Below are positions 3,433 to 50,149 of a stretch of DNA of 64,000 nt, in pieces; position 1 is the first letter of the stretch, and every line of letters starts with the position of its first letter. The position numbers were made by a program, and so were the translations under genes. The stretch spans positions 153,729,782-153,793,781 of the forward strand of contig NC_068981.1 in NCBI RefSeq assembly GCF_001194135.2, in the 5' to 3' direction. Origin of the DNA: Octopus bimaculoides (Eukaryota). The notes below the pieces were generated by a model, which was not told the DNA's origin, ran no database searches, and saw only the letters and a list, made by a program, of their open reading frames with translations.

Positions 3433-3564
3433 CATATTTAGACTGTTGGAAGTCTGCAATGACCCTAAGAATATTATTCATATGTATCCTCCGTGGATGG
3501 CTTTCTAGACCTCCTGAGTGTGGATGAGCAACATCTATGTAGATCAAGTCAGTTAGGTGCAACC
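3433..3564 (-). CDS. RALGPS1: RalGPS exon (132 nt, phase 1-1): (G)[43 protein letters not shown]
   Basis: Acceptor ttatag (AG at 3566-3565), donor GTAAGT (GT at 3432-3431); CDC25 helical-hairpin region. Confidence 0.95.
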
Positions 3565-6500
3565 CTATAATAGAGAATAATTAAATAAACTTACAGTATC
3601 AAAACAAAGGATATTTTTACATGGTTATCTGAGCTACTAGAAATAGTAGCTAAATATCCTTTAATAATACATCATCTTAAAAGGGGAGGAACATACATAT
3701 GATATTTGGTTAAATTCTGAAATTTTTGAGAATATGTTATAACAACAAGATCGAATTTATATGTAATTTAAAGAATGTTGCCATGACTAAAGTGGTTAAA
3801 AAAAAAAAGAAAAGATTAATTCTCTCAAGTAAGAACAGTAAGTATATTCTGTATTCTGAATCAAATGCTGCTTCATTCTCTGATAAACTTACTTGAATTT
3901 TCTAGAAATGATACTTCAAACAAAATTTAGCCTAAGGCTTGAAAGCTAGTGTTGGTTAACTGAATAAGCATATCAAACTTACACATACAATTCCATGCAC
4001 AAAGAAATCTTTAATTATTAGAGACAAGGAGATATTCAGTTTATTTGTTCAATTTTTTATCATCCAGTTTTCCATGCTAGTTTGAGTTTCAATGGAGATA
4101 TATTTGAGGTAGGATTTTTTATGGCGAGATGTTCGGTTTGTTGCTAACTCTTACCCATTTTTCAAGTAAGGGATATCTTCAAGCCACAGGTCTTCAAAAA
4201 CCATACAGTGATCGATCATAATGTCAACAAGGAATCAGCACCATTTCTCTCCAGTGATGACGAGCAAAAAACTTATATACATTGATGGACATGTGCACAT
4301 ATACATACATGATAGGTTTCTTGCAGTTTCCATCCACCAATTCCCTTCACATGACATTTATCAGCATGAGGCTATATTCGAAGACAAATGCCCAATGCAC
4401 CATGTAATGGGACTGAACTCAAAACCATATGGTTACTAAATAAACTTCAAAACCACACAGCCATGCCTGCACTTATTAGTTGAAACTGAACATATCTATT
4501 CAACACCAATATTGTAATCAGTGTATTTATTCACTATATTCTTTTTATCTCCAATAATATTTTACTGAAATATTTTTCAATGCCCCACCCATCAAATAAA
4601 CAGCCAACAGTAAACACAATTATACAGAAGCACTCAAGTCCTAATAATGCATTAATCAACTCTTGTGTTGAAACCAATACATAACACAAAACAGTGCACA
4701 CTAACCTAAATAAGGAATGCATGGCAATTTGACGTGATCCATGTAATCTCGTAACTTTTGTCGGTTGTTGTTCTCAGAGAAGAGGTCTGCTATCTTTTCA
4801 TAGGAGGATTTATCTTTTCGAGACAACATCTGAAAATTTACAGAAAACTAGATTAATGAGGTAACTGATATTAGATATTTCAGGAATTATATTTATTGGT
4901 AAAAAACAAAATCATAAATTATGAAGGTTTCACATGTCATTTTGAAAATTAGGATGTATGAATTAATAGGAGTAGTGACACGATAATAATAATCATAAAG
5001 AAATATAACAATTATTCCTTTAATATTCAGATTACCCTGTCAAATGTAATACTTATTTACATTGTTTTGAATTATTTATGCATTGCCTCAATGCGTCAAG
5101 ATTTCAATGATCTGATTGCTTATTTTTCTAAAATAACATTGTAAGGTAGGTGTGAGCAGTTAGATCTGGCCTCTTTGAACAGAAAACAGGTAGAACATTT
5201 GGTCTTAACATGGCTAGTTCATATTCCAGCAATATTCTACTTAAAAAAATATTGTCCTACAATTTATCAAATGTTATTTAATTTAAGTAATACTCTAATT
5301 ACAATTAGCTGTCATGATCACCAAGAGTTGTATTTATAAGTTACAGAAGAAATAGCAGTGCTCATTACCACTGCATTCCTTCCCAAACTGGAATAACTGG
5401 AAGGTTTATCATCATCATCATCGTTTAACGTCTGCTTTCTATGCTAGCATGGGTTGGACGATTTGACTGAGGACTGGTGAAACCCAATGGCTACACCAGG
5501 CTCCAATCTGATTTGGCAGAGTTTCTACAGCTGGATGCCCTTCCTAACGCCAACCACTCAGAGAGTGTAGTGGGTGCTTTTACGTGCCATTCATAATTAT
5601 TCAACTTGTAAACAAATCTTAACCATTAAGTATTGTTAGTTAAGAAAATAAACCACAACAAAACCCCAACTCATTTCTTTAGGGATTCCCACAAATGAAA
5701 ACAATTTTTTCATCACAGATATCTGTGAGCTTTCTTGATTTTTCAAATCTTCCATGATTTGGATGTTGAAAAGTTTCTCACAATATATTCAAAACTATAA
5801 ATAAAACTGAAGTGGATCACAGCTGCGGGGAGTATGTTTTATTGGTAATATGACTACTAAAATACAATGGTTTCAAATTTTAGCACAAGATCAGCAATTT
5901 TAGAGGGGAGGAGTTAGTCAGTAACACTGACCATCGACGTTTAAGAGGGGATAATATTACCTCTCAGTATTAATACCACCTTAGTCACGAATATATATTT
6001 TTAACAAGCTCACTGGTACTTTATTTTTAATTGACCCCCAAAAAGATGAAAAACAAAGGTGACCTCAGCAGGATTTGAAACCTAAACACAAATAGCCAGA
6101 AGAAATGCCACTAAGCATATTGTCAGGCATGCTAACAATCATGCCAGCTAACAATCATGCCAGCTCACCACCTTTCCCAACCAAATTATAATAATACTAG
6201 CTGGACATGTGCCATCAATAATGACGGCTAATTGTAATATTTTATATATTTAAAAATGGTACATAATAATCACACATACAAACATTCATATACGTTCCTT
6301 GTACATACTCACACACATACTCACATTGAGTTGAAACGCTAATTCTTTTTTTTTTCACTCCTTCCTTCCTTATTCATCTATCACCCCTTCCTTTCTCTCA
6401 CTCCCTCTCAGTCAGGGCTATTACTCTCACTATTTCTCCTTCACTGAATTACTATTTTCTCTCCTCCTCCACGTCCAGCATGATTCTGGACAAGAATGCG

Positions 6501-6785
6501 AATAGGCATGAAAGTACGTACTCGCCTTTATATATTTGATTCTCTGTATTTAATACTCAATATTTCATATATTCAATAAGACATTCAATACTTCATTTCA
6601 TTTTACCATTTATATTATATTATATATTCCATATCCCACATTAATTTTATAAGAATATAAATAAAACATAAAAAACAGAAAGAGTTGGAACTCCTTTAAA
6701 TAATATATTCCTCTATACACAATCATACGAAACCCTTTTTTTGTATATATATTTTTTTAATTTTTATTTTGTATATTTATTTTTA

Positions 6786-6826
<41 letters not shown>

Positions 6827-9800
6827 TATACAAATATATAAAAACACTATGCTCTCTCTCTCAATTTAAAGATATTTTGTTTCATTTAAATTCTTTTAGT
6901 AAACACCTAGTGAAATAATGTTTTCTTCAGAACTTATATGTTGATTTATGCAATTTATATCACTCTATGTGAGGATAAATTGCTAAGTTAGAAGTTAGAC
7001 ATTTCATACAGTTATGACCCAAGTAACTGCCTTTACTTCTTTGTTTGAAGTTTCTCTGAAGGTATGAATTTCTCATTGTGTTAAGATTGGTTCTTTTGTG
7101 TTATTGTTTAGCTCCTTGTCAACCTTGAATGGTCTTGGCCTATAGATCAAAGGCATTCTGTGATGATCTGTCACTCAGCCTCTTTAATATCCACCTGCCT
7201 GAGACCACTCCTGCTTCTACAATACAAACTTCCTGTTTTCACCCTTTAGTGTTCAGATTACTTTTGTTAAATATAAACTAAACTCTACTTGCAAAGACCT
7301 GTTGGGGCAAATGAAATCGAAATTGAGCCAAATGCCAGAGGAGCGCTAACAGCACCATCTGAGCGTGATCATTGCCAGAGCAGCCGTTTGGCTTCCGTGC
7401 CGGTGGCACATAAAAAGCACCATTTGGGCGTGATCGTTACCAGTGTCGCCTTACTGGCACTTGTGCTGGTGGCACGTGAAAAAACATTCGAGCGAGGTTG
7501 TTGCTAGTGCCACTGGACTGGCTCCTGTGCAGGTGACACGTAAAAAAAAAAAACACCATTTGAGCATGGCCATTGCCAGTACCGCCTGACTTCTATAACT
7601 CATATACACACACAGATATAAAGACATTGAATTTTTTTTCAACCAAAATATTCCAGTGGTGTGGGTCATATTTTCCTTTGAAAGTATGAATGGTATTTTA
7701 CATTTTATACTTTGTTAAAAAAAACAGTTGAGGAGCAAATAACTGTAGGGCAGGGATGGGGAGGCAGGTAGCAACACTGGCCAAGTCATTAAAGCATCAG
7801 ACAGACTGCATTGCAATATTTTTACCCCAAACCTTTGTATTCAGAGTTCAAATCCTACTGAAGTCAACTTTGCTTTGCAACCTCTTGTGAGCTGATATCT
7901 GTTGTTTATCTTTCAATTCTCTGTGGTGTCAATAAATGAAGTAGCAACCCTCTTTCTCTCCAGCTGTCACATCCTGGATGTTCTGCTGGGCCAAGAGTAG
8001 GTGAGCCAAAAGGGTATCTACATTTGCCCATGACTACATGGACAACAGAAATAATTAGCAAAAGCATGGAACATGCAACAAAGTGATCTGCAATTTTCAG
8101 CTGTTATACATATACACACACAAACATATATAGCTATCCTGGAAATATCAATGTTGCCTTTTACATAAGTATGGAGGGTGAAGACTTATGATGGCAACAC
8201 TTTTACCAAGGTTATTAATAGCATGATGAAAATGAAATGGCTACAATCAGGAATTAAAACCAGATTTTTAACACAGCTCAGTGTTAGCTTGCCATTATTC
8301 TATGCCACTTGCCATTTTTAATTCTTAAATTGACTGAAATTTTACAAAATTAAAAATAAAAACATTAATTGTTGGTTTGTGTGGTTTTGAAATCTGACCC
8401 ATTTTGTAAATAGTACAATGTAGTTTTTTTTTAAAGCATTGCCTCCCCAGCAGCAACCACCACCACCACCTCTATAACAGCAACAGCCCTATGTTCACAC
8501 TAATGGCTGTGTTTTGTATTAGATGTCTGCATTAGCAAAAAAAAATGAGTGGTGGGAGTTTAGAATTTCAATTATAAAGAATGAGTGATTAACAAACATG
8601 CTTTTCTAATAGGGAGCCCCCATTTTTTTCTTTGTTTCATCAATCAATGTATTTTTTTAAAACAAGCCTCATGGTCTGTTTACTTTTGTCCTGTTTTTTT
8701 TTTTTGTTTTTTTCCTTTATTTTGATTAACAGTTCCTACAAAACAGTATCATAATAACAGTATATTAGTGAATACTGAAAATAATTTTGCTGTGATTGTT
8801 TTTCTCCAGTGGAAACAAAATATCATGCCACTTACACATGCTAATCTAACTTCTCAACTTCCAGATACTTGCTTTCTGATTACGTCATTGTCATTTTAGT
8901 GTGTGTTTAAATTGAGTTCCAAAGCTAATCTAAATTCCATATAGTTTAACCAATATTGACATTTAAAAAAATTAGTAGCAATATGGAATATACTGATTGA
9001 ATTAGAGCTAACTTGAGTCAGCTCTAATTCTATGATGAAAATATGTTTTAAGCATAAACATCCTCCTATTCCCCAAACCCCAATTATAATGAATCTAGGA
9101 ATGCATTATGCAATGTGTCCATTTTTTTTTATAATCCAAAGATATGAATCATAGAGATATTTAGCTGCTATTTGTATCAGGTTATTGTACATGGTCTCCA
9201 TCCAATCAGGCTCCTTGATATATTGGCTGATGGTGAGTTTTATTGTGGCCATACTAGTCTATTTTGGTAGAATTTGAACTCAAGGAATAAAGACAGATGA
9301 AATGCCATTAAGCATGTTGCTCAGTATGCTAACGATTCTGCTAATGATGACATTACAAATGTATAACATAGATCGACTCAATCAGAGCTCACTGAGGCAA
9401 CACAACAAAATATAAAAGCAAGTAACTAAAATCAGATGAATTCCACTTACCATCCATGTCTTGGACAATCTGAATATTGCAGCACTCTGAAGAGCTGATA
9501 ACACAGCCATCACTGAGTGTAAATTGTTCATGTCAAGTAATTTCTGAAATAAAAGAAACAAAAAGCAAGCCTTATACATGAGCATATGGGTGTTAATGAA
9601 GTTGTACAAATATACTTTTACACATAGTATAATGCACACACATACACATACAGATCTAAATGAAAAAAAAGTACTTAAATATCCTTGTAGGTTGAGCTTA
9701 TTCTATTACTCAAACCTGAAGCTAAACCTCCATTGCTAATCTGAGTTTTCCCATTCTTCAACACCACAAGACTCAGAGTAGCTATAAAATGGAGTCTCAA

Positions 9801-12800
9801 CTTCAAATAAATAAACATTGGTGTTCTGTATTTTAGTCCTACCCATAAACAGGCCAAATGGAGTTTCTATGCAGTCAGACAACCTACAATAAATTAGCAA
9901 CTAAATCTACCGCAAATCCTTGCAACTGTTTTTTTTTTTTTTAAAGTTTGATCATAGGTCTGCAAGTCTGCTTGACCAGGGCTGATGTAGGATTAACCAA
10001 CAACACTGGAGAAATCCATAGGTTGTTGTCCTACCATTTAAAGAGCCAATGGGGTGGGGTGCATGCGCTTGTCATGGGCATGTGCGCTTGTCATGGGCAT
10101 GTGCGCTTGTCATGGGCATGTGCGCTTGTCATGGGCATGTGCGCTTGTCATGGGCATGTGCGCTTGTCCAGGTCGTATGTCTCTCTCATGAGTGTATGTT
10201 ATTGTTATTTGGTGCCATGCATGTGTGTTGAATATATGTTGTATGTTGCAAGCTGTTTTGTATTTTGCAAATTATACTTATCCTAACTTACATAAAATAC
10301 AACTCCTACCTAAGAAGCCATGACGGATCTTATTTTTACCCTAGTGTATTCCCCCTTCCCCTCACCTCTCTCTCACACTTTATAGAAGCTTTCCAATCTT
10401 CATCACTCAATTCAGAATTAAAGAAAAACAGCTCAATATTAAACACGAAACTTACTCTGGCTATTTTTATGAAGTGAGCTAATACTTCCGCTCTTGTTTT
10501 CAATGTTAAGCAGCTAAGAATTTCTCTCTGCACCCAGAAATTCACCTGCAAAAAAAGAAGAAAAAAGGGCTTACAAATGGAAAAAAAGAGAAGGAAAAAT
10601 GAATACTGGAATGAATATATTTTAGAGTTGTACGTGTTTTGCAAAGTATGTGATGAAAGATAATATAATTAAGCCAAGGCTGTGGAGCCAGAGTCAGAAG
10701 CGATTACAGGGTTACTAAATAGGGAGTCAATAAAAAAGGAACCAAATCTGACTGATTAAATGTAATATAATACTTTCAAATTTCCAATTTCACAGAAATC
10801 AAATTAACCAGTTCTACAAATAACTAATTTCAAAATAATCAAATGAGATTTAAAGGTTTCTGTGAAAGAGAATCTGGTTGAAGCAATTTTGTTTCAAAGA
10901 ACATGATGTCAGTAAATTGGGGGAGGGTGTTAAACTCCAATTCAACACATAGTTTTTTTTAATCAATTTTGTAAAAATAAACTTTTTAATCTTCTACGAT
11001 GTAGTTTTATTTCATATCATCTTTCATATTACATCCCTCTCTCTTTTATATTTAAACACTGCTTTAATCTTAATAAGGAAGAGCTATGAATTTAATTACT
11101 TTTAAAAATGAACATTTGTTAGGTTGATTTAGGTGCTCAAAGATCTAAAGTACATCAATGTTAAAACTAAAAGACTAAACTCATAAACAAGGACATTCCT
11201 AATTTTCCTTTGTCGTAGTTTTATAATTTATTACTTTTAACAAAAAACAGGCCCCCACATATTTTCAACACTCAAACCCTCACATTTACATTCTTATAAT
11301 TGTAACCCTCCATGTCCATCTCAAATCATATGCATAAAGGACCACATCAAATCATGTGTCCCATATACTCTGCCATTATTCCATTCTGTTCTCCCTTTCC
11401 CTCTATTTTCCCCTAGCTATTTGATATCAACATCCATCATTTGCTCACCATTTATTCACCTCTTACTATCCACCACGCTCTCATCCCAATTACAGTTTCT
11501 ACCATCACATTATTGCTTTCTTCTCCTGTCACTATTGCTCTCCACTGATCAGTTCCTCGGCCAAATAGAAAAGAACAAGTGAACACATACATCGTAAAAG
11601 GGTGACAACTTCTAATCTTACAGGGTACAATACAACTCCACCTGTTAGTGTTATCTTAATACCACTTGAGATACTCTGTAAAATGGTTTGTGAACAAATG
11701 AAGCTGTGGGGATGAAGGGATCTTTTAGTCTTGTCAAAGATATGGCAATCTCCTTGGTGCTAGGACTATGATAAAAGGCACCCAATAAACTCTGAAAAGT
11801 TGTTGATGTTATGAAGGACATCCAGCTGTAGAAATCAATGCCAACAAGTGAAACTTAAAAGCATCCAACCCATCAAAGAGAACACAAATGGTTAACCAAA
11901 CCACTCCAACATGGAAAGCAGGCACAAGATGAAAAACATGGGAAGAAGAGGAATGTATACTACTAAGTATCAAAGTCATTTTTGCTGCTGTACAGTTTGG
12001 TCACTGTTATATTCCATCTTTTGTAGATGTACAATAGACTGATACATAATCATATATATAATTAATAATCAATATATATATACGATACAAAATACAAAAT
12101 AAAACGACAGTGAATACAATGGTATTGGTGTGGGTTTCTTTTAATAAAATAAGCATATAAATATTGAAATAAATATCAAAATAAAATAAAAAGTAATTCA
12201 TAAATATTTAGGAAGTAGAAAATATGATACTGGTTTGCAACAGAGCTGCATATGATCTGATAAAGACAAGAGAGTCACTAATACAATTGACTTTTGTTGA
12301 GGTCTAACTAAATAATCCCAGGACAGAGTACATTTGTACTAATGAGAAATATTTCACAGGAACTTTAGAATAATGTGATGAAGATGGTGTGGAGTAGGGG
12401 TTGACTGGAGTAGGATGGTGTAGTAGGGAATCAAATGGAAGTAGAATAGAATGATAGAGTGGCATAGTGTGGTGTGAAGTGACATGATGGTAGTGCAGCA
12501 TGACTGGCACAAGTGGAGATTTTCTATCTGAAGTGGTGTTATGTGATGTGGAGTAGCATTACAGCATGCACAGTGGAGTGGCGTCTGATGCAGAATGGAG
12601 TGGAATGAGGTGCAGAGTAGAGTGATGGCATGAGGAAGAGACTGATGGTGGGAGCAGTGAGAGGGGCTGAGCATGTGAGATAAGAAACCTATGAGTGAGT
12701 GAATGGACAAAGTGTAAAAATCATGTATTCAAAACAAATCACCTGAATGAAATAAATTAATACATTCACAGATCAAGAAAATAAAATGATGCCCAAGGTT

Positions 12801-15800
12801 CCTCATAACATGCTTTCTTTCTTCAATTACCCATACCTACATCTACATTTGAAGGCATGTGGCTTAGTGGTTAAGGTACTCATCTCATGATAAGGTCATG
12901 AGTTCAATTCCTGGTGGCACATTGTGTCCTTGAGCAAGACACTTTATTTCACGTTGCTCCAGTCTACTCAGCTGGCAAAAAAATATGTAGTACTTGTATT
13001 TCAAAAGACCAGCCTTGTCGCATTCTGAATCTCCAAGAACTACATTAAGGATATGCAGGTTTGTGGAGTGCTCAGCCACTTTTGCACATTGATTTCACAA
13101 ACAGGCTGTTCTGCTGATTGAATCAACTGCAAACTTCATCACCATAACCAAGAGAGTGCCAATACATTATTTACAATAGACAGATAGGTGTCCTCATCTT
13201 GCTTGCTGTTATCACAACATTTCAGTTTTAGTATACAGGACATCCGTATACCACAAGCCAACCTTCATTGGACAATACCTCAGCTTCAATTCCCACCATC
13301 CATGCAGTATAAAGAGAGGGATTGCTCAGTGCCTAAAACATCGAGCAAACACTATAAGTAGCGATCCCGATACACACCAGGAAGAAATGATCAGGTTAAG
13401 AAACAATCTACCTAAAGAATATACTATCCACTCCAATTAGGAAGAGGAGAGAGAATGAAACCCTTAAACTGAGTACAGTCAGTCTACCTTATGTTAAAGG
13501 GCCTCTTGGAAAAGATACAAAAGATGTGTGGTCCATATGACATCAGGACAGTATTGAGGAGTAATACAACACTTCGCAAATATCTTCTCCGAGTAAAACC
13601 ATCCATAAAAAATATGGCCCAAAACTGCATGCACTCTATCCCAAGCAGTTGTGGTAGGCTATACAAAGGTGAAACATGCTGCCCCCTTAAAGTAAGGGTA
13701 GAGGAATATCATAAAGCTGTGTGTGACAAGGGGATGTTGAAAAATCAGGTATAGCTGATCGTGTATAGAAAAACGGAGACCACCTCCCACTGTGGGATGA
13801 ATTTAAAATAACTGATAGAGAACACCACTGGAAAATACAAAAATTAAAAGGGGCTGCACATATGCTATAACACAATAACCTTCTAAGCAGACCTAGTGCA
13901 GATATGAATATAATATGGGAACCAGTATTAAGAAAAGATAAAATACTAGCTTTATAAGCCCTAAAATTCACCCAATAATTGCCTACAGGTATATAGTGTA
14001 GTGGATAAGAGCGCAGGCTATTACCCTTGTATTCTAAGTTCAATCCCAGGCAGGGATCAATAATACATTTAGCATGTAAAAAAAACTATCTTATTTAACT
14101 GTGATGGATTGGTGTCTTATTTAACTGTGATGGATTGTTGTGATCTCAGTCACTTCTATCTGTCATAGAAACCAGGTAAGAGGCCTTTTGAGTCCTTGGA
14201 CTCTAGACAGTATTCACAATATTCACAATTATCTTCTATCTTCTTGTTTCATTCATTAGGCTGCAACCATGCTAAGGCACCACCTTCAAGGATTTTTAGC
14301 TGAATGAATCAACCCCAGTACTTTTTCTTTTTTAAGCTTGGTACTTTTATTAATTATCAGTCTGTTTTGCCAAACTGCTAAGGTATGGTGGCATAAACAC
14401 ACCAGGCATTGCTGTGTGATTAATGAGTTCACTTTGCCAACACAAACATGTGGCCCTAGAATTCATTTAGTGTCTTTTACTGTTATTTCAGTATGAGAAA
14501 TAACTTGAGTGGAGTTTGGTAGATAGAAAATGTTTGGTAACCATTGTGTGGGTGTGCGCACATGTGAGTGTGCAAATGTGTGCATGTGTGTGTGCGTGTG
14601 TGCAAGTGTGTGCAAGTTGATGTGTGTGAGTTTGCATGTACTTATGCATGCATATGTTCATGCATATATGTGCAAGTGCAGTTATGGCCATGTGATTAGG
14701 AAGTACATTTTGCAACTATGAAGTTTTGCACTTGTTCCCGCTGCATTGTGCTGCGGGACAGTGTATTCTTGGACTGACCAATGCCTTGTGAGAGAAATTT
14801 GTATGTGGAAACCATGGGAGATTCATCATCGAGGTGGGGCTCGAGTATTCATGTCCTCCCATATCCTGCCATTGTTTACAAGCTGTGAAAACGTTATTAA
14901 TGCCACTATAGAAAATCTGCCTTGACAAGTCTCATTTGACCTATTTTAATATGGAAATATGAATGTAGTAGTTGTTGTTGTGGTGGTGGTGGTGGTGGTG
15001 GTGGTGGTGGTCATGGTGCTGTATTTATGTGGACATATTTTTCATCAATTTATACCTCTGTAGGATATAACCATCAGCAACAGAAAACAAAATAGTAAAA
15101 AATCGTGTTTTATGGATGAAATCCTTTGCATTGAGTTAAGATACATCCTAGAGATTTTTGTCATCAAAAATGCAGTGAAGGAGGGCGAGCTGGCAGAAAC
15201 ATTAGCACGCCAGGTGAAATGCTTAAGCTGTTACATTCTGAGTTCAAATTCCGCCGAGGTCGATTTTGCCTTTCATCCTCTCAGGGTTGATAAATTAAGT
15301 ACCAGTTATGTACTGGGGTCGATGTAATCGACTTAATCCCTTTGTCTGTCCTTGTTTGTCCCCTCTATGTTTAGCCCCTTGTGTGCAATAAAGAAATAAG
15401 AAATGCAGTGAACCAGTACTTGGTTTGTTACAAAAATATTAACTAATGACATTAATAACAAATTGTAATAGTAAATGAATCTGTTATCTCATTTTAGTCA
15501 TTGGACTGCGGCCAGTTAGGCTACTACCTTGAAGCATTTATTTGAACAAATTGACTCCAGTATTTATCTTTAAGTCTGGCACTTGTGCTATCTGTCTCTT
15601 TTACTGAACTGCTAAGCCAGAGATGCGTAAACAAACCAACACTGGTTATCAAGCAGTGGAATATCAAGCATGGAATGGAAAGACACAGATGCCCACACAT
15701 GCACATGTGATGGGCTTCCATATAGTTTCCTTCTCACAAATTCACTCACATGACATTGGTCAGCCAAGGGCTTTAGAAGAAGACACTTGCTCAAGGTGTC

Positions 15801-18800
15801 ATGCAGTGGGACTGAACTCAAAACCAGGCAGTTGCAAAGTGTGCTTCTTAAGCACACAGCTATGCCTATACCTATACAAATAAAATCCCCAGTAAATTAA
15901 ACTTAACACATCTACATCTACATCTCATGTTACAAGCAAACATTCATTCTCTACTAAAAACCCTCAAAACTAATGTACCTTAAGACTGCATTAACCTCCA
16001 GCTTCTTATTTCTATCTAACTTTAAGAGGGTTCCCTCATGCTACACAGTAATGTTTTTTGTCTATAGAGACAACAACATACACACACCCACACAGAGTAA
16101 TAGAGGGTTCCCTTTTCCCATTATTTATAAAAACATTCAAAAATGTGTAGCACAGCTCTCTTCTACAAAACTAGTCTGACCATTTATTTCGCTCTTTCAT
16201 AGAAAAACAAATTAATGACCCAATTACTCTTTATCAAGCATTCAACCAGCCAACTACTATGGTTTCATTTTGATTTAAATAATTATGAACTTTTAAACAG
16301 CAAAACCTGTATATAAAATAAAATAAAATAAAATAAAATGGGGGGAAAAAAAACAAGAAAAACGAATCTTCTCTACATAGTTATCAATGCAACTATTAAT
16401 GCCTCTAAGAATACTTGTGAAGCACAATGGAAACTAGGAAAACAGGAAATGAAAATCAGAACTGAATACATTGTTAAATGATCAGAGAAAGCATGAACAT
16501 GCAGACTGTAGGAGATAAGAAGAGTATATAGATGTGTGTGTTCAGCTCCAATACGTCAATTGATAACAACTTACATGATTGAATCGCCGAGTAAAAGCTA
16601 CTACATTGGGGGCTTTGATCAACTTTTCTTTTGTGGTCCATGCACAAGAAGTCAGCTCCTACAATACATGAAAGCAAATTTGAGATTAAATAAAAGGCAT
16701 TTAAGAGAATATTTTTCTTTTTCTTCTTTTTTTTTGAGGGGGTGGGAATGTTCTTGTAAAATAGATATGAAAATCCAAGTAAAATTTTTAAATAACTTTA
16801 AATACATTAAAAAAAATCTCCCTGAAAGTATTCTAAATAAATATATAAGAAATACCACATACTGACAAAATTTAATAAACATTTTGTTTCTTATTCATCA
16901 TCATCATTTAATATCCGCTTTCCATGCTAGCATGGGTTGGACGATTTGACTGAGGATGGGCGAACCAGATGGCTGCACCAGGCACCAATCTGATCAGGCA
17001 GAATTTCTACAGCTGGATGCCCTTCCTAATGCCAACCACTCAGAGAGTGTAGTGGGTGCTTTTACTTGCCACCGGCATGAGGGCCAGTCTGGCGGTACTG
17101 GCAATGGCCACGCTCAAATGGTGTTTTTTACGTGCCACCTGCACAGGAGTCAGTCCAGTGGTACTGGCAACAACTTCGCTCGAATGTTTTGTTCTTGTGC
17201 CACCGGCACAAGTGCCAGTAAGGCAACGCTGGTATCAATCATGTTCAAATGGTGCTTTTTATGTGCCACCGGCATGGAAGCCAGACAGCTGCTCTGGCAA
17301 TGATCCCACTTGGATGGTGCTGTTAGCGCTCCACTGGCACGGGTGCCAGCCATCGAATTTGATTCAATTTCAATATCACTTGTCCCAACAGGTCTTCGCA
17401 AGCAGAGTTTAGTATCCAATGAAGAAAGGTTGGCATGGGTGCCAGTCGTCGAATTTTATTCGATTTCACTTGCTTCAACAGGTCTTCGCAAGCAGGGTTT
17501 TGTGTCCAAAGAAGGAAAGGTACGCATAAGTGGGCTGGCTACACCCTTGGTAAAGGCCATGGGTTATGGTCTCACTTGTCTTGCCAGGTCTTCTCACACA
17601 CAGCATATATATATTCATATTTTTATAAAAAGGAACTAAAGACATATAATCATTGTCATTTAGCATTCATTTTTCACACTGGTATGGGTTGGACAGGTCA
17701 GCATGATCCAATGAGTTGAAGGATTGTGTTGTGCTCCAATGTCTGTTTATACATGCTTTCTACAGCTGAATGCCTTTCCTAATGCTAACCACTTTACGAA
17801 AGTGTACCAAGTGAGTGCTCTTTTCATGGTACCAGTACTAGTTAGGCCATCTTGCAATTTCAAAAATAAGGGCTTGAAGTGGCCCCTATAACTGGAGAAG
17901 AATAGAAGAGGGAGAGTGAATAGAGGAATAGAGAAGGAAGGGATTAGTGTCAGGGGTTAGTGAGGAAGGGAAGAACAGTATAAAGTGATAAGGTGAATTG
18001 TGTAGATCAGGGGTTATTTTGCTTGTGGTTCCCTTGAGAGCTATCTTATCTAGGGACCCCATATATGCACATGTAAGTTTTTGAAATAAAATATTTGTTT
18101 GTAGGTTAGTAAAAACTAACAATGAAACAATTTCGTTTTATTCATAACAAATTCCAAATACAAATCGTGAAAATTTCAATAAATACAGGTACCTCTCATA
18201 GGGTGACACGTAAAAGCACCCACTACACTCTCTGAGTGGTTGGCGTTAGGAAGGGCATCCAGCTGTAGAAACTGCCAAATCAGATTGGAGCCTGATGTAG
18301 CCATCTGGTTTCACCAGTCCTCAGTCAAATCGTCCAACCCATGCTAGCATGGAAAGCGGACGTTAAACGACGACGACGACGACAGACCCACAAATTACAA
18401 TTTTTACTTGTGGAGCCCCTAAAAGCTTCTGTGGACCCCAGTTGGGAACCCCTAGTGTAGATGGTCCAGGGCTATTCTACATGGATGGGAAGTGTGAGGG
18501 AAAAACAAGAACGGTAAAAATAGATGAGGGTGGCAAGAGAAATCCAGAGTTGTCATTGAAGGAAATAGAGGTGTAAGGGTGAGGTGTGTATGTGAGTAGA
18601 CCAGAGAAGAGAGATGAGAGAGAGTGGTATTGAGGCGGCAGAGAAGCTATGGGGAGAGGACAGTGAGAGAAAAAGAGGTAGAGGATGGAATAGTGGATGA
18701 ATGCAATGCAGTATGAACAATGAAGGGGGAGAGAAGCTGGAGAGTATCAGAGAGGGGAGGGGTGTAGAACAGTGTGAATACAGAGAAAACAAGCTACAAA

Positions 18801-18983: not shown

Positions 18984-21900
18984 TACATACACACACACAG
19001 ATAATGATCCTATATTTAGAAACTTATAAACACATTATAATATACCAACACTCAGCATCTGATGTACAAGAAATGCAATTATAGAGCCCTAAAGTAACAT
19101 GATATATTTAGACAATCTGCCAGCATTCTCATTCTCTTTCTAAATCTCTTATAATAAAAGGATTTGGGGAAAATGAAATTAGATATACTTCTTTAATTCT
19201 AAATATGCTTATTTTGAGTGAATGTGCATGCACACACATTTTGATATCCTCTTATCATAGTAGACATTCATTCCCAACTGAACATAAAATATACCTAAAA
19301 CATAGAATTAGCTTTCTTTAATAAAATACTTCAAGTTTTTGTTTAAAACAGGAAGTAAGGTTTGCAAGTCAAAAATATTCCTGCCTTTCTTGTACAACAA
19401 ACATAGATAAGCTCAGCACTTTACTTGTAAAGAAGTAACAGTGAATAAAGGATATATTTAAAGAGATGTAAGCTGGTAATTGTTTTTGCATCCTTGTTAA
19501 ATTTTTTCCCAAACAGTAGCTTATAAGTTCACAATTTTATCAACAGAGAAGTAAAATAACAGGAAGCTAGTTACAGTAATATTTCTAGCACAGAAACACT
19601 GTCTCTTATGGTTAGAAAATATAAAACAACACAATGCACCCACAGAATAAAATAGGAAGTAGCACAATTAATGAATGTTTCGATAACTGCAACTCTGAAC
19701 GAATTATGAAAAAAAAATGGAAAAGAAAATAACAACATGTATTTCTTTCCTATCTTCCTTCTTATTTTTTAAAAAGGAAAACAGGGAAAGGAAGAGACGA
19801 TGGAGGGGGGGGGGTGAACACTACAAGAAGATATAGTGTAAACAATTTGTTATTGGCAACAAATATAAGAGGCTAGCCACAAATCATTCTTGGAAAAAAA
19901 CCAAACTCTCACAGAATCCCCACTCGGTAGTAAATAGTATGGGGAATAGCAGAAAACATGGTAGTAGCTGCTCCCCAGCTTGTTATTACTTTCAATACCA
20001 ATCTGTCAATGAGTACTCGTGTTTCTGTCTGGAGATTAATTGGAGAGTGAAATATTTGACCTTAACAACATTCAGGAAATACCTCAGTAGATAAACTGTA
20101 CAGCAGCCAGATACTGAGGCGGAGGAGGAGAAAGAGGAGTGGACTAGGAAAGAGATCTTTTATAGCTCCCTAATGATCAGAGAAATTTTACATCTCAATT
20201 ATGACATTTCAAGTAGATTACCATTAAAAACACTATGTAATGAGATTAAGTAAACTTACATGGCAATAAAATTACAAATTCTACCGAGCATTCCAGAAGA
20301 AACAGAATGTTTAACATCATAAGTTCAATATACTAAAGTTGAACTGTGAATGGAGGTCAATGGAACAATTTACATTCAATTTCATTAGAAACTAAATGAC
20401 TATGTCAAAATATAAGGAGATCTAATGTCAGAAAGTATCCTGGAAAAATGTAGAAAAGTAAGTGTGTGTGTGTGTGAGAGAGAGAGAGAGGGAGAGGGAG
20501 AGGGAGAGAGAGAGAGAGAGAGAGAGAGAAAGAAAGAAATAAAGAGAGAGAGAGAGAGAAAGAAAGAAATAAAGAGAGAGAGAGAGAGAAAGAAAGAGAG
20601 TGAGAGAGAAATAGAGAGAGAGAAAGAGAAAGAAAGAGAGAGAGAGTGGAAACAAAGAGAAAGAAAGAGAAATAAAGAGAGAGAGAAAGAGAAAAAGAAA
20701 GAAACAGAAAGGGAGAGATACCCTTCAAAATTACACATTATTTAGTCATTTTATGACCATATTTCTAATAAAATAATTCTTTTATTCTTTAATTTCTTTT
20801 TTTCAATTAGTGGATTAAAGCCATAATGGAGCTTTAACTCTCAGTCCTTCTTCTAAGTTTGGTATTTACTTATTCAATTAGTCTTTTTTTACCAAACAGT
20901 CAAGCTATACGGACATTAAAAAAAAACAACCTATCTCTGACAGCAGGAGTCAAATGTGTGCGCACACACGCATGCACACCCACCCACACAACTGGCGGTC
21001 CATCAGTTACAATGACAAGGCTTCCAGTTGATCTGATCAACAGAACACCCTGCTCATAAAACTAATGTGCAAGTGGCTGAGCACTCCACAGACACATGTA
21101 CCTTTAATGTAGTTCTCAGGAAGATTCAGTGTGACACAATGTGACAAGGCTGGCCCTTTTGAATTACAGGTAAGTGAACAGAAGCATCAAGAAATGAAGC
21201 TTTTTGCTTAAGAAAACGAGATACTGCTTAATCCAGAAAACAAACTCATGATCTAGCAATCACGAGTGCAACACCCTAACCACTAGGCCACGCATCTTCA
21301 CACACACACAATATACATACATATATCATCATCATCATCGTTTAACGTCTGCTTTCCATGCTAGCATGGGTTGGACAATTTGACTGAGGACCGGCAAGCC
21401 AGAAGGCTGCACCAGGCTCCAATCTGATCTGGCAGAGTTTCTACAGCTAGATGCTCTTCCTAACGCCAACCACTCCGAGAGTGTAGTGGGTGCTTTTACG
21501 TACCACCGGCACAAGGGCCAGTCACACGGCACTGGCAATGGCCACGCTCAAAAAGGTGTTTTTTATGTGCCACCTGCACAAGAGCCAGTCCAGCGGCACT
21601 GGCAATGACCTCGCTCGAATGATTTTCTAATGTGCCACCAGCACAAGTGCTAGAAGGCGACGCTGGCAATGATTACGCTCTAATGGTGCTATTTACGGGC
21701 CATTAGCACGGAAGCCAGACAGCCGCTCTGGCAATGAACACACTCGACAGTGTTGTTAGCGAAAAGTTGACAGTGACTTTGAAGTTTCAGCTTGCTTGCA
21801 TTAATTAGCTGAAGATTAATTTTGTTTTTTTTTTGTTTTTTTTTTTCTTGGTGTAAACCGAATATTAATTTACTGCAACCGAATGAAATACTTGCTAAAA

Positions 21901-23962
21901 TAAGGAAAGCATTTTATTAGCAGCAACATTGGACGAAAGGCCACAATAGATGTCATCCTTGACTCCATTGCGCCAATTGTTGTTGTTGGCACTCCGTCGC
22001 TTACGACATCGAGGGTCCCAGTTGATCCTATCAACGGAACAGCCTGCTAGTGAAATCAACATGCAAGTGGCTGAGCACTCCACAGACACGTGTACCCTTA
22101 ACGTAGTTCTCGGGGATATTCAGCGTGACACAGTGTGACAAGGCTGACCCTTTGAATTACAGGCACAACAGAAACAGGAAGTAAGAGTGAGAGAAAGTTG
22201 TGGTGAAAGAGTATAGCAGGGTTCGCCATCATCCCCTGCCTGAACCTCGTGGAGCTTTAGGTGTTTTCGCTCAATAAGCACTCACAATGGTCTGGGAATC
22301 GAAACCACGATCCTATGACCACGAGTCCGCGAGCCCTAACCACTGGGCCATTGCGCCAATAACAAAATATCAAAAAACAAAAAAAAACAAAAAATGGTCA
22401 TAGCTGGAATGTTTTTGATCGGCGCTGACAACACTTAAATTATGTCTTTTCTAGTCACAGATGTAAACAAAAACATCATTGTATCTACTTCTAGGTAAGA
22501 CAGAGCTACTGAAAGTGTATAAATAATTGAAATGTACCGAATTATGTCCAGTTACTGTTAGATCAATTCTTTGACCCTATGGCATTGACATAAGGTAGCA
22601 CCAATAGCAAGAGTCAAACCATAGACTCTTCATGCAAGTCAACACTAATAAGTCATTTTATACTATTTTACAATAATTTTTGTATGAAGAAACTATTTTG
22701 TATGAAGCCGAATTTTTGTATGAAGAAACTATTATTTCATGATAATAATAATAAAAAAATTAAACAGCAATCATATTCCTGTTCAAAACTGTCAAAACAT
22801 GTTAAAAATCAGAAAAATTTCTAAATTTCTAATGTAAATTTGTAAGAGGAAAAGATTAAAAATTAGGTAATTTAAATATGTTTTTTATTTCTTTCCCTAA
22901 AATGCTAAAACATAATTTTTTAATAATATAATACATAGTTTTTAATAACAGATAAAGTTTATAAATAACTTTTTGAAGATATTTTTAGACTATAACCTCA
23001 GTTCTAATCTAAAAACTAATCTTGACCAAAGTTATAAGTTTTCCCACTTATTTCTAATCTAAATGACAAAACAGTGATTCAAGTAGAATTAGATAGGTAA
23101 AGTTCATAAATAACTGCTTTTCAAATTAGGCCAGAAATGTGGGGGAGGGGAATGACTGATTATATCAAATCCAATATTTGACTAGTATTTTATTTTATCA
23201 ATCTCCAAAGGATGAATGACAAAGCTGACCTTAGCAGGATTTAGAATCAATATGAAGCAGCACAATACTACAAGGCATTTTTATTTAATACTTTGACAAA
23301 TCTGTTAACTCACTGCTCTAAATAATTGTTTCTAAATTAGGTATGTCAGAAACTTGCGGGGAAGAAATAGTCAATCATATCAACTCCAAAACTTAACAAG
23401 TATTTTATTTTATTGACCTTTTATTGACGAAAGGTGCGGTTGACCTCAGTAGAAATTGAACTCAAAACAAAGAACCAGAGCAAATACCACAGGGCTCTAA
23501 TGATTCTGCCAATTGACCAACCGTAATGAAACTAAATTCATGTAGAATTCCTTTATATGTTTCAGCCCAAGGCTGTGGCTAAATAGAAGCATCTCTATTT
23601 AAAAAAAAAAAAAAACCCAAAGCCATCTGTACATCAAAATCAAAGTTTACTAGATGAATTCATAGCAGAACAATGACCATTAAAAGCTAAAAGCAAAAAC
23701 AGAATTTTCAACAATCTGATGATAAAAAATTAAATTAACACAAAAAGCAAAGTCATAAAAAAAAAAGTTTCTTTACCTCAGGTTGTATTGCTTGAAAGAC
23801 AGGTAAATCCAATAAAGTTATTTGACTCTGGAAAATGAGGAAAGAAAGATATTCACAAAATGTGCCGATGATGAAATGAGCATTACTTATCTAATTGTAA
23901 ATAAGTATAAATTAGCAGAGACACTCAGCATTGCTTGGGATTAAAATGGCATAGTTTGTGTG

Positions 23963-25913: not shown

Positions 25914-28764
25914 TANNNNNNNNNNNNNNNNNNNNNNNNNNNNNNNNNNNNNNNNNNNNNNNNNNNNNNNNNNNNNNNNNNNNNNNNNNNNNNNNNNNNN
26001 NNNNNNNNNNNNNNNTATATAAACAGGTTTCACTTAGGCATAGTGATACTAATAGCCCAATGTTAGAACTCAATATTAACGTGCATCAGAATAAAATAGA
26101 GAGCAAAATATCGAATTAAATAAATGACAAGGTAACAGAATTAAATGATCAACTTTCTTTGCTTACCACTGATTCTGCTATAAGAAGCAGTGCCCTCACA
26201 GCTGAGTGCTTCAGCATCACCTTATAGCTTCTTCAGAGTTTCTAAATGCAATGCAAGTTTGAGAAAGCATTTACAGAGTGTGCCGATGCTTTCCCAAATA
26301 AGCTTCCATTTCATTTTAAGAGCTCTGAGGAAGCTATAAGGTGATACACAATCATTCAAATCTGAATGCACTACATAGCATAACAGAAACAGCTGTATGC
26401 TAATGAAATTAATTACGTAATTCTGTTTCCATGTCATTTGTTTAACTATATATGATTTTTCTTTGAGTTTTAAGTTCTTCATGAGAAAGTCCAAGACAGT
26501 CACTAACAAAGTGACAAGACTTTTGAGTTAGAGTTCCTGGCGTTTGTAAATATGTGGTTGAGTTGGTGTGTTGATTGAACTGTTGATGCATACGCCCAAG
26601 TGTGTGCATCTATACACATAATCTCAGATAAAGAATTTGGTGAATGTCTTACAAATCTTCACTGTGCCACTAATAGATTGGATTTGAAGAATCCATGTCA
26701 GTTTCTTTTTTGCTTTCTCTGTGAAACCAAGTATTTCTAGGTTTTTGTGCAAATTTGTTGGTACAAAATGTAATGCACCCTATAATGTATTTATGTAAGT
26801 ATATAGAGGGAAGAGTGGAGTAATTGTGTGATATAGTTGCAGGGAGTTTAGTAGTGTGGTGTAGATGTTGGGGATTTGGGAATTTGGTGTAGTTGTCAAG
26901 GTTAATGTACCAAAAAGAGGTTCAATAATTTACTTTCAGATACCATTAAAATGGACTTTTATATGCAAGTTCTATATATATATTTCAACTCATATTGGAT
27001 TTTAGTCCATGTCAGAAGACGGTATTAAAGAAAAAAAAACTCGTGTAGCACATTTCCACCTTCTTAATGAAGCAAAATTTAAAAAAAAAAAAAGGGTTCA
27101 ACTTACAGCAAAATCTTCTGGTAGGACACGTAATACATCAAATACAACTGCATCATAACTTTTCATCCGGGTAAGACTAGAGCGTTTCTCCAATGACTCT
27201 TGACTGCCATGACTAACACCCTAAAAAAAAAGAAGAAAATACAAATTAAAAAGGTCATAAATGACAATACATTATTGGCAAAAGAAACAATGAAATTACT
27301 CTGAGGGAGCAAGAACTGAGAGTGAGGGAGGAGATGCAGGCATAGAATGGTATCAAATAACATTACAAACTATTAAACATAGATTACAAAACATTAATAT
27401 ATCCAACAGATACAAGTAATTATGCTGATTATCACCATCATCATATTAGCTCCCCATGCTGACATGGGTTGGATGAATCATTTCTGCTTTTCTTTCTAGA
27501 AAAGTGAAAAAAGCACATCTCACTTGTAAGTTCCATTTTCAAAGGCTTGGCTTCTACATTTAGATACCCTTTCCTAACACCAACCACTCTACAGAGTGTA
27601 CTGGATGCATTTTATCATGACACCAGCACTAGAGAGGCTATCATGCAGTGTCTGAAAACACTAAAGGGTCCTCTTGACCCCATACTTCATAGCGTGTACT
27701 GTGTACATTACATCATGGCACTAGCATTGGAGAGAATTGCCATGACTGACAAGACTAAAGAGTCTACACAACCCTCACGTTTCTAATTACTCATCAACTG
27801 ACAGACCCAATATTAGAAATAAAATAACTTCTGTACTGATTCCAGTTGATTAAACAAAAGGTCAACATTTGAAAGCGAAGTATACAGTGAACTGAACCAA
27901 TTTTAGTATTTTCTGGCGCTATCAAGTCTGGAGGAATGAAAAGCAAAGTGGACCCAAGTTAAAATTGGAAGCAAATTAGTCTTGGACATCAGAGTTTTTC
28001 AGCATTAAGGATTTAATGTTAGTCAAAGACAAGGAAAAATTTGTCACAAGCAACATTAGAACTAAATACATCTCCATCAAGTCATTGATGGAACCCCTAT
28101 TTGATCACTGATAAAAATAGCAGCAAAATTTTCAAGAAATCAAACCATACCATCTTTAAATGGAAAAAAAAGGGTATATTTGATAAGGTTGTCTTGAATA
28201 CATTGTGCAAAAAAATGAGATGGTCATGGTTAGAATGGTTTAATCATAAGTCCACTTGATTATAGCTAACCCATGGATAACAACATCATGTCTTTAAGCT
28301 GATGAAATATAAGTTGAACCCTTTAGCATTTATACTAGCCATATCTAGCCCAAAACTGGCCAGATCTGGAAAGTCATACCTACCCTACAATATCATTCTA
28401 AGAGTAAGCAATCATATCATGAAAATCTCAAAGCTACAAGATAACATAGAATTAATTCAAGACAATGTATATAAATAAACATTACATTTGACTGACTAAT
28501 ATGACCACTAAAGGGTTAAAATAGTCCAATGAAATAACAAATAAATGAGCACTCTTTCAGCTGAGTGTTGAAAAACAAATTGATGCTCCAAGTTTTTGAG
28601 TTGCTAAACAAACCTGGAACCTTTTGTTCAAATGAAAAAAAACATATACAAAAGATAGCAAAAGTTTGTCATTAACAATATCCTCTCAAATTTCAACTGA
28701 AAATTCTCATTAACATTGTTGAAAACCAAGCAATAGTAATTTACATTCTGGTAAACATTCAATA

Positions 28765-38175: not shown

Positions 38176-38405
38176 AAAAATCTACACTATCTCCAACAAA
38201 GATGCCAGTAGTACCATGGCAAACTTCAATTCCCTATCAAGAAATCTGAGATGGGATCTAATTTTTAGTCTGACAGGCAGAGAAACATACAATGCCAATT
38301 CTGAACTCATGAGCAAAGACCTATGGACTAGAACAATAGTTTAAAACCCAGCCAGACATCAACTTAAATCCTGTGTACCTGTATCTGTGTCTTAAACTTC
38401 CACTA

Positions 38406-49796: not shown

Positions 49797-49834
<38 letters not shown>

Positions 49835-49847
49835 ACATATATACACA

Positions 49848-50120: not shown

Positions 50121-50149
50121 CTCATATATAGATAGATAATATAGACATG

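What the first reader, a model, noticed from the sequence alone, without database searches (positions are those of the whole stretch)
5408..18383. Two nested inverted SINE pairs bracket three phase-0 RalGPS exons: candidate 267-nt circRNA with a stop-free frame
Seen: an outer pair, 5408-5589 with 18202-18383 (about 95% complementary over ~180 bp), and an inner pair, 7287-7591 with 17086-17402 (about 85% over ~300 bp), are nested so both could form in one pre-mRNA fold. They enclose exactly exons 16575-16658, 10456-10545 and 9451-9543 (84+90+93 = 267 nt), all phase 0 with no stop and in-frame ATGs. Established: inverted Alu pairs in flanking introns drive back-splicing, and stop-free circles of 3n length can undergo rolling-circle translation. 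Inference: back-splicing of the 9450 donor to the 16659 acceptor would give a circle with junction ...KTWM|ELTSC encoding repeats of an 89-aa CDC25 fragment; the same fold could cause in-frame triple-exon skipping. Caveat: this SINE family is so abundant that such pairs can arise by chance.
Basis: partly seen in the sequence, partly recalled or inferred. Interest (0 to 1): 0.72.

Follow-up and report, generated by a model that had tools for sequence, protein, structure and literature searches.

The report
Chance inverted repeats around RalGPS exons
Three small exons of an octopus RalGPS gene are flanked by oppositely oriented copies of a very common octopus repeat, but this layout is what chance gives at that repeat density, so a circular RNA here is possible, unproven and unremarkable.

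Summary
The sequence facts hold. Three minus-strand exons (16658-16575, 10545-10456, 9543-9451; 84+90+93 = 267 nt) have canonical AG/GT sites, are all phase 0, and encode 89 aa of a RasGEF/CDC25 domain of a RalGPS orthologue. Both inverted pairs exist, at 92% (not 95%) and 82% (not 85%) identity.

The interpretation adds little:
- The "two SINE pairs" are the head and the 66-67-nt tandem-repeat body of one composite Octopus repeat, with 12 copies in 64 kb.
- 29 inverted pairs of at least 100 bp bracket eight different exon blocks. Orientation shuffles give two or more disjoint pairs around these exons in 56% of trials.
- The outer upstream arm has two closer partners in its own intron (1.1 and 2.9 kb against 12.6 kb), one made before it and one just after. 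Only the inner pair is uncompeted.
- Five consecutive exons are phase 0-0 with ancestral boundaries, so a stop-free 3n circle is automatic.
- Published octopus data report few circRNAs (296 across 18 tissues), attributed to ADAR.

Most likely these are neutral intronic repeat insertions that form ADAR-substrate dsRNA, with at most trace back-splicing. No expression data could be tested.

The parts
5403..5589 (+). E3: head-only copy of the Octopus composite repeat. It is the downstream (3') arm of the 'outer' pair, in the intron after exon C, 3.9 kb from the exon C donor.
   Evidence: blastn and alignment; 2.3% from the head consensus
18202..18388 (-). E6: head-only copy in the opposite orientation. 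It is the upstream arm of the 'outer' pair, 1.5 kb upstream of the exon A acceptor, and the only minus-oriented head in the two flanking introns.
   Evidence: 3.5% from the consensus
7277..7591 (-). E4: body-only copy (66-67-nt tandem units plus the far end of the element, no head). It is the downstream arm of the 'inner' pair, 1.9 kb from the exon C donor.
16895..17413 (+). E5: full composite copy. The head (16895-17073) is the within-intron competitor of E6, 1.1 kb away. The body (17086-17413) is the upstream arm of the 'inner' pair, 0.43 kb from the exon A acceptor.
   Evidence: 8.3% from the head consensus
21324..21761 (+). E7: second full composite copy in the same upstream intron. Its head is a within-intron competitor of E6 (2.9 kb away, transcribed first). 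Its body is an alternative partner for E4.
   Evidence: duplex energies
16575..16658 (-). Exon A, 84 nt, phase 0-0, [28 protein letters not shown]. Its acceptor would be the back-splice acceptor.
10456..10545 (-). Exon B, 90 nt, phase 0-0, [30 protein letters not shown].
9451..9543 (-). Exon C, 93 nt, phase 0-0, [31 protein letters not shown]. It holds the three in-frame ATGs, and its donor would be the back-splice donor.
23777..23827 (-). Upstream neighbour exon X2, 51 nt, phase 0-0 ([17 protein letters not shown]).
4706..4829 (-). Downstream neighbour exon D, 124 nt. It starts in phase 0 (MLSRKDK...) and ends in phase 1.
27107..27220 (-). Exon X1, 114 nt, phase 0-0. It is the first of five consecutive symmetric exons.
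3433..3564 (-). Exon E, 132 nt, phase 1-1. It is the last RalGPS exon mapped in the window.

Best explanation
The inverted pairs are neutral by-products of repeated insertion of one abundant, Octopus-specific composite interspersed repeat into the long introns of the RalGPS gene. The repeat has a head of about 180 bp followed by 66-67-nt tandem units.

The gene runs on the minus strand, so the copies are transcribed in the order E7, E6, E5, exons A-B-C, E4, E3. Opposite-orientation copies will form long intramolecular dsRNA. E6, the only minus-oriented head nearby, most likely pairs first with a head in its own intron: E7, already made, 2.9 kb away; or E5, 1.1 kb away. Its partner E3, 12.6 kb downstream, is transcribed much later. 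The E4 body has no partner in its own intron and can pair across the exons with the E5 or E7 body.

The expected fate of such duplexes in a cephalopod is A-to-I hyper-editing and unwinding, followed by ordinary linear splicing. If back-splicing of A-B-C occurs at all, it would be a low-level by-product driven by the inner pair alone. The 3n, stop-free property is inherited from the ancestral phase-0 exon structure.

Shown: the sequences, identities, energies, copy census and shuffles. Inferred: the order of folding, ADAR action and the low circRNA yield.
For: Copy census and family structure:
- 12 copies in 64 kb. The 'outer' and 'inner' sequences are adjacent parts of one element at 16895-17413, 21324-21761 and 49837-50127.
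- An ORF read through the repeat hits only Octopus bimaculoides (85-88% identity) and O. vulgaris named proteins, plus one unnamed ENA sequence.

Chance level:
- 29 inverted pairs of at least 100 bp bracket 8 different exon blocks.
- Shuffles: 0.56 for two or more disjoint pairs around A-C with orientation shuffled; 0.77 for any block with position and orientation shuffled.

Competition:
- Net duplex energies are comparable: outer -251, E7xE6 -222, E6xE5 -216, inner -320 kcal/mol.
- Competition between RNA pairs governs back-splice choice (PMC5052039).

Exon structure:
- Five consecutive phase 0-0 exons.
- The same exon boundaries are seen in relatives from other animals, including named fish proteins.

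Literature:
Against:
- A-C is bracketed by the longest and most similar cross-intron pairs in the window.
- The inner pair has no within-intron competitor, and its upstream arm lies only 0.43 kb from the acceptor.
- Complementarity far shorter than this suffices for circularisation in other systems (PMC8330042).
- Young copies E3 and E6 (2-3.5% from the consensus) still pair almost perfectly.
- No RNA data were examined, so a real circRNA is not excluded.
Confidence: 0.72

Rival explanations
1. Cross-intron pairing (inner pair, with or without the outer pair) brings the exon C donor next to the exon A acceptor, and a 267-nt exonic circRNA is produced at a detectable, reproducible level.
For: - Canonical splice sites and strong complementary matches across the flanking introns.
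- The nested fold is the MFE of the local arms.
- The inner pair has no competitor in its own introns.
- Flanking complementary matches promote back-splicing in animals (PMC5052039; PMC8330042).
- RALGPS2 yields a validated circRNA in chicken, though from different exons (PMC10926623).
Against: - The arrangement is at chance level.
- The outer arm E6 has closer partners in its own intron, one transcribed before it and one shortly after.
- If E6 pairs with the E5 head, the E5 body is enclosed in that hairpin loop, and pairing with E4 would need a long pseudoknot (inference).
- Only 296 circRNAs were detected across 18 octopus tissues, against 10,957 genes with reconstructed isoforms. That is a prior of a few per cent per gene.
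- RalGPS occurs in that paper's supplements only in the miRNA-target table.
Confidence: 0.15
2. The circle is translated by rolling-circle translation into concatemers of the 89-aa CDC25 fragment.
For: - 267 = 3n, no stop in frame 0, three in-frame ATGs. One (GTGATGG) has G at -3 and G at +4 (and the sequence).
- Rolling-circle ORFs are translatable in human cells (PMC9242994).
Against: - It needs the circle to exist first.
- No IRES or m6A evidence.
- The property is generic: 14% of human circRNAs have in-frame rolling-circle ORFs, and here any block of five consecutive exons would have it.
- The product covers RasGEF profile positions 21-108 of 181, a partial domain that is likely to misfold.
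Confidence: 0.02
3. The same cross-intron pairing promotes in-frame skipping of exons A-C (23777 joined to 4829). The result would be a RalGPS isoform lacking 89 aa of the catalytic domain.
For: - Both junctions are phase 0.
- Complementary matches promote exon skipping as well as back-splicing in C. elegans (PMC8330042).
Against: - The same chance and competition arguments apply.
- All three exons have GTAAGT donors, and B and C have strong polypyrimidine tracts.
- No transcript evidence.
Confidence: 0.1

Closest known systems
Exon circularisation driven by inverted Alu or other complementary sequences (Jeck 2013, Zhang 2014, Liang & Wilusz 2014: own knowledge; Zhang 2016, PMC5052039)
   Same: Oppositely oriented interspersed repeats in the two introns flanking a block of internal exons, canonical splice sites, long flanking introns, and several competing pairs in one locus.
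   Different: No back-splice junction has been observed here. The repeat is an Octopus-specific element of unverified class, not Alu. The arms lie 0.4-3.9 kb from the splice sites. One arm has nearer partners within its own intron.
Chicken circRALGPS2 (exons 2-8 of RALGPS2; product circRALGPS2-212aa; PMC10926623)
   Same: Same gene family. It is an exonic circle from the 5' coding part of the gene with a reported protein product.
   Different: The chicken circle contains exon 2, from which translation starts, spans seven exons, and has a finite ORF that ends after crossing the junction. It is experimentally validated. The octopus candidate is three internal exons, with an infinite ORF and no data.
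Rolling-circle ORF circRNAs, e.g. circPFAS (Fan et al. 2022, PMC9242994)
   Same: A circle of 3n length made only of coding sequence with no in-frame stop.
   Different: Those have mass-spectrometry and reporter support. Here the property is a by-product of phase 0-0 exons and is untested.
Complementary-match-driven coupled back-splicing and exon skipping (C. elegans zip-2; PMC8330042)
   Same: The same intron pair could bring together both the back-splice sites and the skipping sites.
   Different: The zip-2 matches are 7-13 nt, conserved across species, and tested by deletion. Here the matches are repeat copies, two of them young (E3, E6), with conservation untested.
ADAR hyper-editing of intronic inverted-repeat dsRNA and its antagonism of circRNA biogenesis (Ivanov 2015, Rybak-Wolf 2015: own knowledge; applied to octopus in PMC9699675)
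   Same: Near-perfect intramolecular duplexes of 180-330 bp in a neural-type gene of an animal with very high ADAR activity.
   Different: Editing at these particular repeats has not been measured.

Membership tests
circRNA locus driven by inverted repeats | An observed back-splice junction (RNase-R-resistant, divergent-primer product) | not testable with these tools
   No octopus RNA data were reachable. Exact-ORF look-ups found no contigs. Neither RalGPS protein search returned an octopus protein.
circRNA locus driven by inverted repeats | Canonical AG acceptor and GT donor at the would-be back-splice sites | tested here: met
   tattgtag|GAG at 16659/16658; ATG|gtaagt at 9451/9450
circRNA locus driven by inverted repeats | Reverse-complementary matches between the two flanking introns | tested here: met
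   Outer 91.8% over 184, inner 82.1% over 324; net duplex energies -251 and -320 kcal/mol
circRNA locus driven by inverted repeats | Cross-intron pairing not out-competed by pairing within an intron | tested here: inconclusive
   Inner pair: no partner within its own introns. Outer pair: E6 has E5 (1.1 kb) and E7 (2.9 kb) in its own intron, net -216 and -222 kcal/mol. Thermodynamics favours the cross pair; transcription order and distance favour the competitors (inference).
circRNA locus driven by inverted repeats | Enrichment of inverted pairs over the local background | tested here: not met
   Shuffle probabilities 0.56 and 0.77; 8 exon blocks bracketed
Rolling-circle-translated (infinite-ORF) circRNA | Length divisible by 3 with a stop-free frame and an in-frame AUG | tested here: met
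   267 nt; frame 0 open through three concatenated turns; Met at residues 63, 70 and 89
Rolling-circle-translated (infinite-ORF) circRNA | Cap-independent initiation element (IRES or m6A) and ribosome or peptide evidence | not testable with these tools
   No assay or data available
RalGPS (RasGEF + PxxP + PH Ral exchange factor) | CDC25-homology RasGEF domain most similar to RalGPS proteins | tested here: met
   PF00617 E = 1.9e-27. The 229-aa exon concatenate is 85% identical to a Candidula protein, 77% to Capitella, and 63-65% to vertebrate RalGPS1.
RalGPS (RasGEF + PxxP + PH Ral exchange factor) | C-terminal PH domain | not tested
   The 3' part of the gene lies outside the window; the last mapped exon is 3564-3433.
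SINE (tRNA-, 7SL- or 5S-derived non-autonomous retroposon) | Pol III-type head (tRNA-like, or A/B boxes) | tested here: not met
   ARAGORN found nothing. Rfam found nothing at gathering score and only noise at E<5. No A/B-box regex match on either strand of the consensus.
SINE (tRNA-, 7SL- or 5S-derived non-autonomous retroposon) | Target-site duplications and a defined 3' tail | tested here: inconclusive
   No flank repeat longer than 7 nt. Copies begin with (CAT)n or (GTC)n, often preceded by (TG)n(TA)n, which could be a 3' microsatellite tail read on the other strand.

The most novel reading that the evidence does not exclude
Young, lineage-specific repeat insertions have created, in an octopus Ral-GEF gene, a 267-nt circRNA with an infinite reading frame. 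It would be made in neural tissue despite high ADAR activity, and translated by rolling circle into concatemers of a CDC25-domain fragment. That would be a repeat-born, species-specific protein product.
Probability: 0.02. Interest if true: 0.5.

Novelty: new member of a known kind. Interest (0 to 1): 0.14.

Why it matters
If the circle existed, it would be one more case of repeat-driven back-splicing. It would have modest added interest because cephalopods combine a repeat-rich genome with very high ADAR activity, which is thought to suppress circRNAs.

As it stands, the value of the check is negative. In a genome this dense in one repeat family, nested inverted pairs around exons are the default. 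A stop-free 3n circle follows automatically from ancestral phase-0 exons. Neither should be used on its own to nominate circRNA candidates.

Tried and rejected
- Rfam (gathering score on the whole window; E<5 on one full repeat copy) and ARAGORN, to class the repeat: nothing.
- Literature search for three conserved 18-20-mers of the repeat: no paper holds them.
- MetaSINE paper: it names only octopus OR1 as a CORE-SINE, and none of the sequence strings searched for occur in it.
- Two word searches for 'SINE' mostly matched 'sinensis' and gave nothing useful.
- Exact-ORF look-ups of two window ORFs overlapping exons B and C, to find the public record or transcripts: not on record.
- Retrieving an octopus RalGPS protein to fetch the orthologous locus from another species failed. 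The hits returned were no longer than about 1.7 times the query length, so no full-length cephalopod entry appeared.
- A search with a back-splice junction peptide was not run. The linear 89-aa query, which contains nearly all the same words, found no octopus sequence.
- The supplements of the octopus circRNA study give the number of circRNAs but not their identities. RalGPS appears there only in the miRNA-target table.
- Target-site duplications: none found.
- I considered whether the double nesting is special. It is not. E4 can also pair with E7, which crosses rather than nests with E3xE6.


Full report
**1. What is in the sequence**

The window carries seven coding exons of one gene on the minus strand:

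| Exon | Coordinates | Length (nt) | Phase |
|---|---|---|---|
| X1 | 27220-27107 | 114 | 0-0 |
| X2 | 23827-23777 | 51 | 0-0 |
| A | 16658-16575 | 84 | 0-0 |
| B | 10545-10456 | 90 | 0-0 |
| C | 9543-9451 | 93 | 0-0 |
| D | 4829-4706 | 124 | starts 0, ends 1 |
| E | 3564-3433 | 132 | 1-1 |

- The exons were mapped by tblastn of homologous fragments. A probe that I recalled from memory as a human RALGPS2-like sequence was also used, only to locate exons. The junctions were read directly.
- Joined, the exons give 688 nt and a continuous 229-aa peptide.
- Exons A-C encode 89 aa that match Pfam RasGEF positions 21-108 of 181, E = 1.9e-27.
- The 229-aa peptide is 85% identical to a protein of the snail Candidula, 77% to Capitella, and 63-65% to vertebrate RalGPS1.
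- All three exons have AG acceptors and GTAAGT donors. The concatenate is open in frame 0 through repeated turns, closed in the other two frames, and has in-frame Met codons at residues 63, 70 and 89.

**2. The inverted pairs**

Both pairs are present and nested.
- Inner pair: 266/324 = 82.1% with 26 gap columns.
- No assembly gap lies between 5 and 19 kb.

**3. What the repeats are**

The 'outer' and 'inner' sequences are not two families.
- At 16895-17413, 21324-21761 and 49837-50127, the 180-bp 'outer' sequence (the head) is followed within about 13 nt by the 'inner' sequence in a fixed relative orientation.
- The 'inner' part is an array of 66-67-nt tandem units (3.3 and 2.3 copies) followed by a terminal segment of about 100 nt.
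- An older copy at 45412-46123 has turned the 3' half of the head into a 100-nt x 5.9 satellite.
- I count 12 copies or fragments in 64 kb, eight in one orientation and four in the other.
- E3 (5403-5589) and E6 (18202-18388) are head-only and young, 2.3% and 3.5% from the head consensus. The full copies E5 and E7 are 8-9% diverged.
- E4 (7277-7591) lacks the head.
- An ORF read through the repeat matches only proteins annotated in Octopus bimaculoides (85-88% identity) and O. vulgaris, plus one unnamed ENA sequence. This identifies the window as an Octopus genome and the repeat as an abundant octopus element.
- Its class is not established: no tRNA-like head, no Rfam match, no A/B boxes, no target-site duplications. 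'SINE' is therefore a working label.

**4. Is the arrangement more than chance?**

No.
- A self-comparison of the window gives 29 inverted pairs of at least 100 bp. These bracket eight different exon blocks (A-C, A only, A-E, X1-A, X1-C, X1-D, X1-E, X1-X2), besides five pairs that bracket no mapped exon.
- Keeping the 12 copies where they are and shuffling only their orientations, at least one inverted pair flanks A-C in 94% of trials, and two or more disjoint pairs in 56%.
- Shuffling positions as well, some exon block gets two or more disjoint pairs in 77% of trials. The pre-specified block A-C gets them in 2.9%. A reader scanning for any such block faces the 77% figure.
- Nesting is not special either. 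E4 pairs equally well with the E7 body (81.6% over 250), and that pairing crosses rather than nests with E3xE6.

**5. Would the fold form?**

Thermodynamics:
- Net duplex energies (cofold minus the self-folds): outer -251; E7-head x E6 -222; E6 x E5-head -216; inner -320; E7-body x E4 -232 kcal/mol.
It is about 33 kcal/mol better than the best fold lacking E3.

Kinetics (inference, not shown):
- The gene is transcribed from high to low coordinates. E7 is made first, then E6, then E5, then the exons, then E4, and last E3.
- When E6 emerges, the E7 head is already available 2.9 kb away, and the E5 head follows 1.1 kb later. E3 appears only after another 12.6 kb.
- Duplexes of about 180 bp at -216 to -222 kcal/mol will not reopen on their own.
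- Competition among RNA pairs is the accepted determinant of back-splice choice (PMC5052039).
- I therefore expect E6 to be captured inside its own intron, which removes the outer pair.
- If E6 takes the E5 head, the E5 body sits inside that hairpin loop, and pairing it with E4 would need a pseudoknot of about 290 bp. If E6 takes the E7 head, the E5 body stays free.
- The inner arm E4 has no partner in its own intron. The E5 body lies 0.43 kb from the exon A acceptor, and E4 lies 1.9 kb from the exon C donor.
- The inner pair alone is thus the only realistic driver of circularisation.

**6. The stop-free frame**

- X1, X2, A, B and C are all phase 0-0 and of 3n length, so any block of them would give a stop-free 3n circle.
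- The boundaries before A, between A and B, and after C coincide with breaks in annotated or ORF-derived fragments from fish and from unnamed metagenome and read-assembly sequences. Genomic ORFs from other sources show A+B or B+C fused, with the outer boundaries kept. The exon structure therefore long predates the repeat insertions.
- In human data, 14% of full-length circRNAs carry an in-frame rolling-circle ORF (PMC9242994).
- The property is generic, not a sign of design.

**7. Prior from the organism**

- The only cephalopod circRNA survey found in the paper library reports that octopus circRNAs are 'expressed at overall low levels'.
- It found 296 high-confidence circRNAs over 18 tissues, 200 of them in a single tissue.
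- It reports no departure from other invertebrates in back-splicing rates, and it attributes the low level to ADAR melting intronic dsRNA. Most editing lies in introns and 3'UTRs (PMC9699675).
- Set against 10,957 genes with reconstructed isoforms, that is a few per cent per gene.
- The paper's supplement lists the octopus RalGPS1 orthologue (LOC115217012 / LOC106870506) only as a miRNA target.
- Allowing a several-fold uplift for strong flanking complementarity, I put detectable circ(A-C) at about 0.15 and its translation at about 0.02.

**8. Comparison with what is known**

- The locus works, if it works at all, like circularisation driven by inverted repeats (Jeck 2013, Zhang 2014, Liang & Wilusz 2014: own knowledge; PMC5052039).
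- The same pairing could favour exon skipping, as shown for C. elegans zip-2 (PMC8330042).
- A RALGPS2 circRNA with a protein product is known in chicken. It spans exons 2-8, its ORF starts in exon 2, and the ORF is finite at 212 aa (PMC10926623). It is not the same circle.
- Membership of the class 'circRNA locus' fails on the only defining feature that counts, an observed back-splice junction. That feature could not be tested.

**9. Verdict**

- The best explanation is neutral repeat accumulation that gives ADAR-substrate dsRNA, with at most trace back-splicing through the inner pair.
- Interest is low.

Noticed in passing
window 16956-17303 (+), and the repeat family generally: An ORF read through the repeat head and body matches parts of annotated Octopus bimaculoides proteins (A0A0L8GDB2, C2H2 zinc finger; A0A0L8I061, precomputed Pfam domains including WD40 PF00400) at 85-88% identity, and O. 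vulgaris 'hypothetical predicted proteins'. The repeat is either exonised in those genes or swept into gene models by annotation.
   Followed up: partly
window 45519-46118: A 100-nt x 5.9 tandem array whose unit is the 3' half of the repeat head (…CAGCTGGATGCCCTTCCTAATGCCAACCAC…GGGTGCTTTT…). It looks like a repeat-to-satellite transition within one copy.
   Followed up: partly
window 10064-10168: A perfect (100% matches) 19-nt x 5.5 tandem repeat, TGCGCTTGTCATGGGCATG, in the 0.9-kb intron between exons B and C. It is probably a very recent or polymorphic minisatellite.
   Followed up: no
window 20476-20718: A 243-bp (GA)n tract in the upstream flanking intron. In the minus-strand pre-mRNA it is a long (UC)n polypyrimidine run, a potential PTB-type binding platform between E7 and E6.
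   Followed up: no
window 26108-26453: A self-complementary (palindromic) stretch of about 350 nt at 71%, next to the assembly gap at 25916-26015. It could be a hairpin-forming element or an assembly artefact.
   Followed up: no
window 645-659, 25916-26015, 28948-28957, 34774-34927, 38504-38702, 41672-41866, 56008-56334: N runs of varied length, so the window comes from a gapped scaffold assembly. One gap truncates repeat copy E8 (28820-28947). Repeat counts are therefore lower bounds.
   Followed up: partly
proteins P0007, P0008, P0009, P0012-P0014 (other species): Genomic ORFs from unnamed metagenome or read-assembly sources have exons A+B, B+C or X2+A+B fused without an intron, while keeping the outer boundaries. 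This indicates lineage-specific intron loss in RalGPS on an otherwise conserved exon structure.
   Followed up: partly
window 5403-5416, 18375-18388, 1781-1833, 21290-21332, 49800-49860: Repeat copies start with (CAT)n or (GTC)n. In three copies this is preceded by (TG)n(TA)n microsatellite that aligns between copies. Read on the other strand, this would be a 3' microsatellite tail, so the true orientation of the element, and which copies are 5'-truncated, is unresolved.
   Followed up: partly
window 16659-16678: The exon A acceptor (tttgctttcatgtattgtag) has a clearly weaker polypyrimidine tract than those of exons B and C. Slow use of this site would lengthen the time window for alternative outcomes.
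   Followed up: no
window 37713-38178 and 54015-54459: An unrelated direct repeat of about 470 bp at 80%, another interspersed family in the region upstream of the mapped exons. It was not classified.
   Followed up: no
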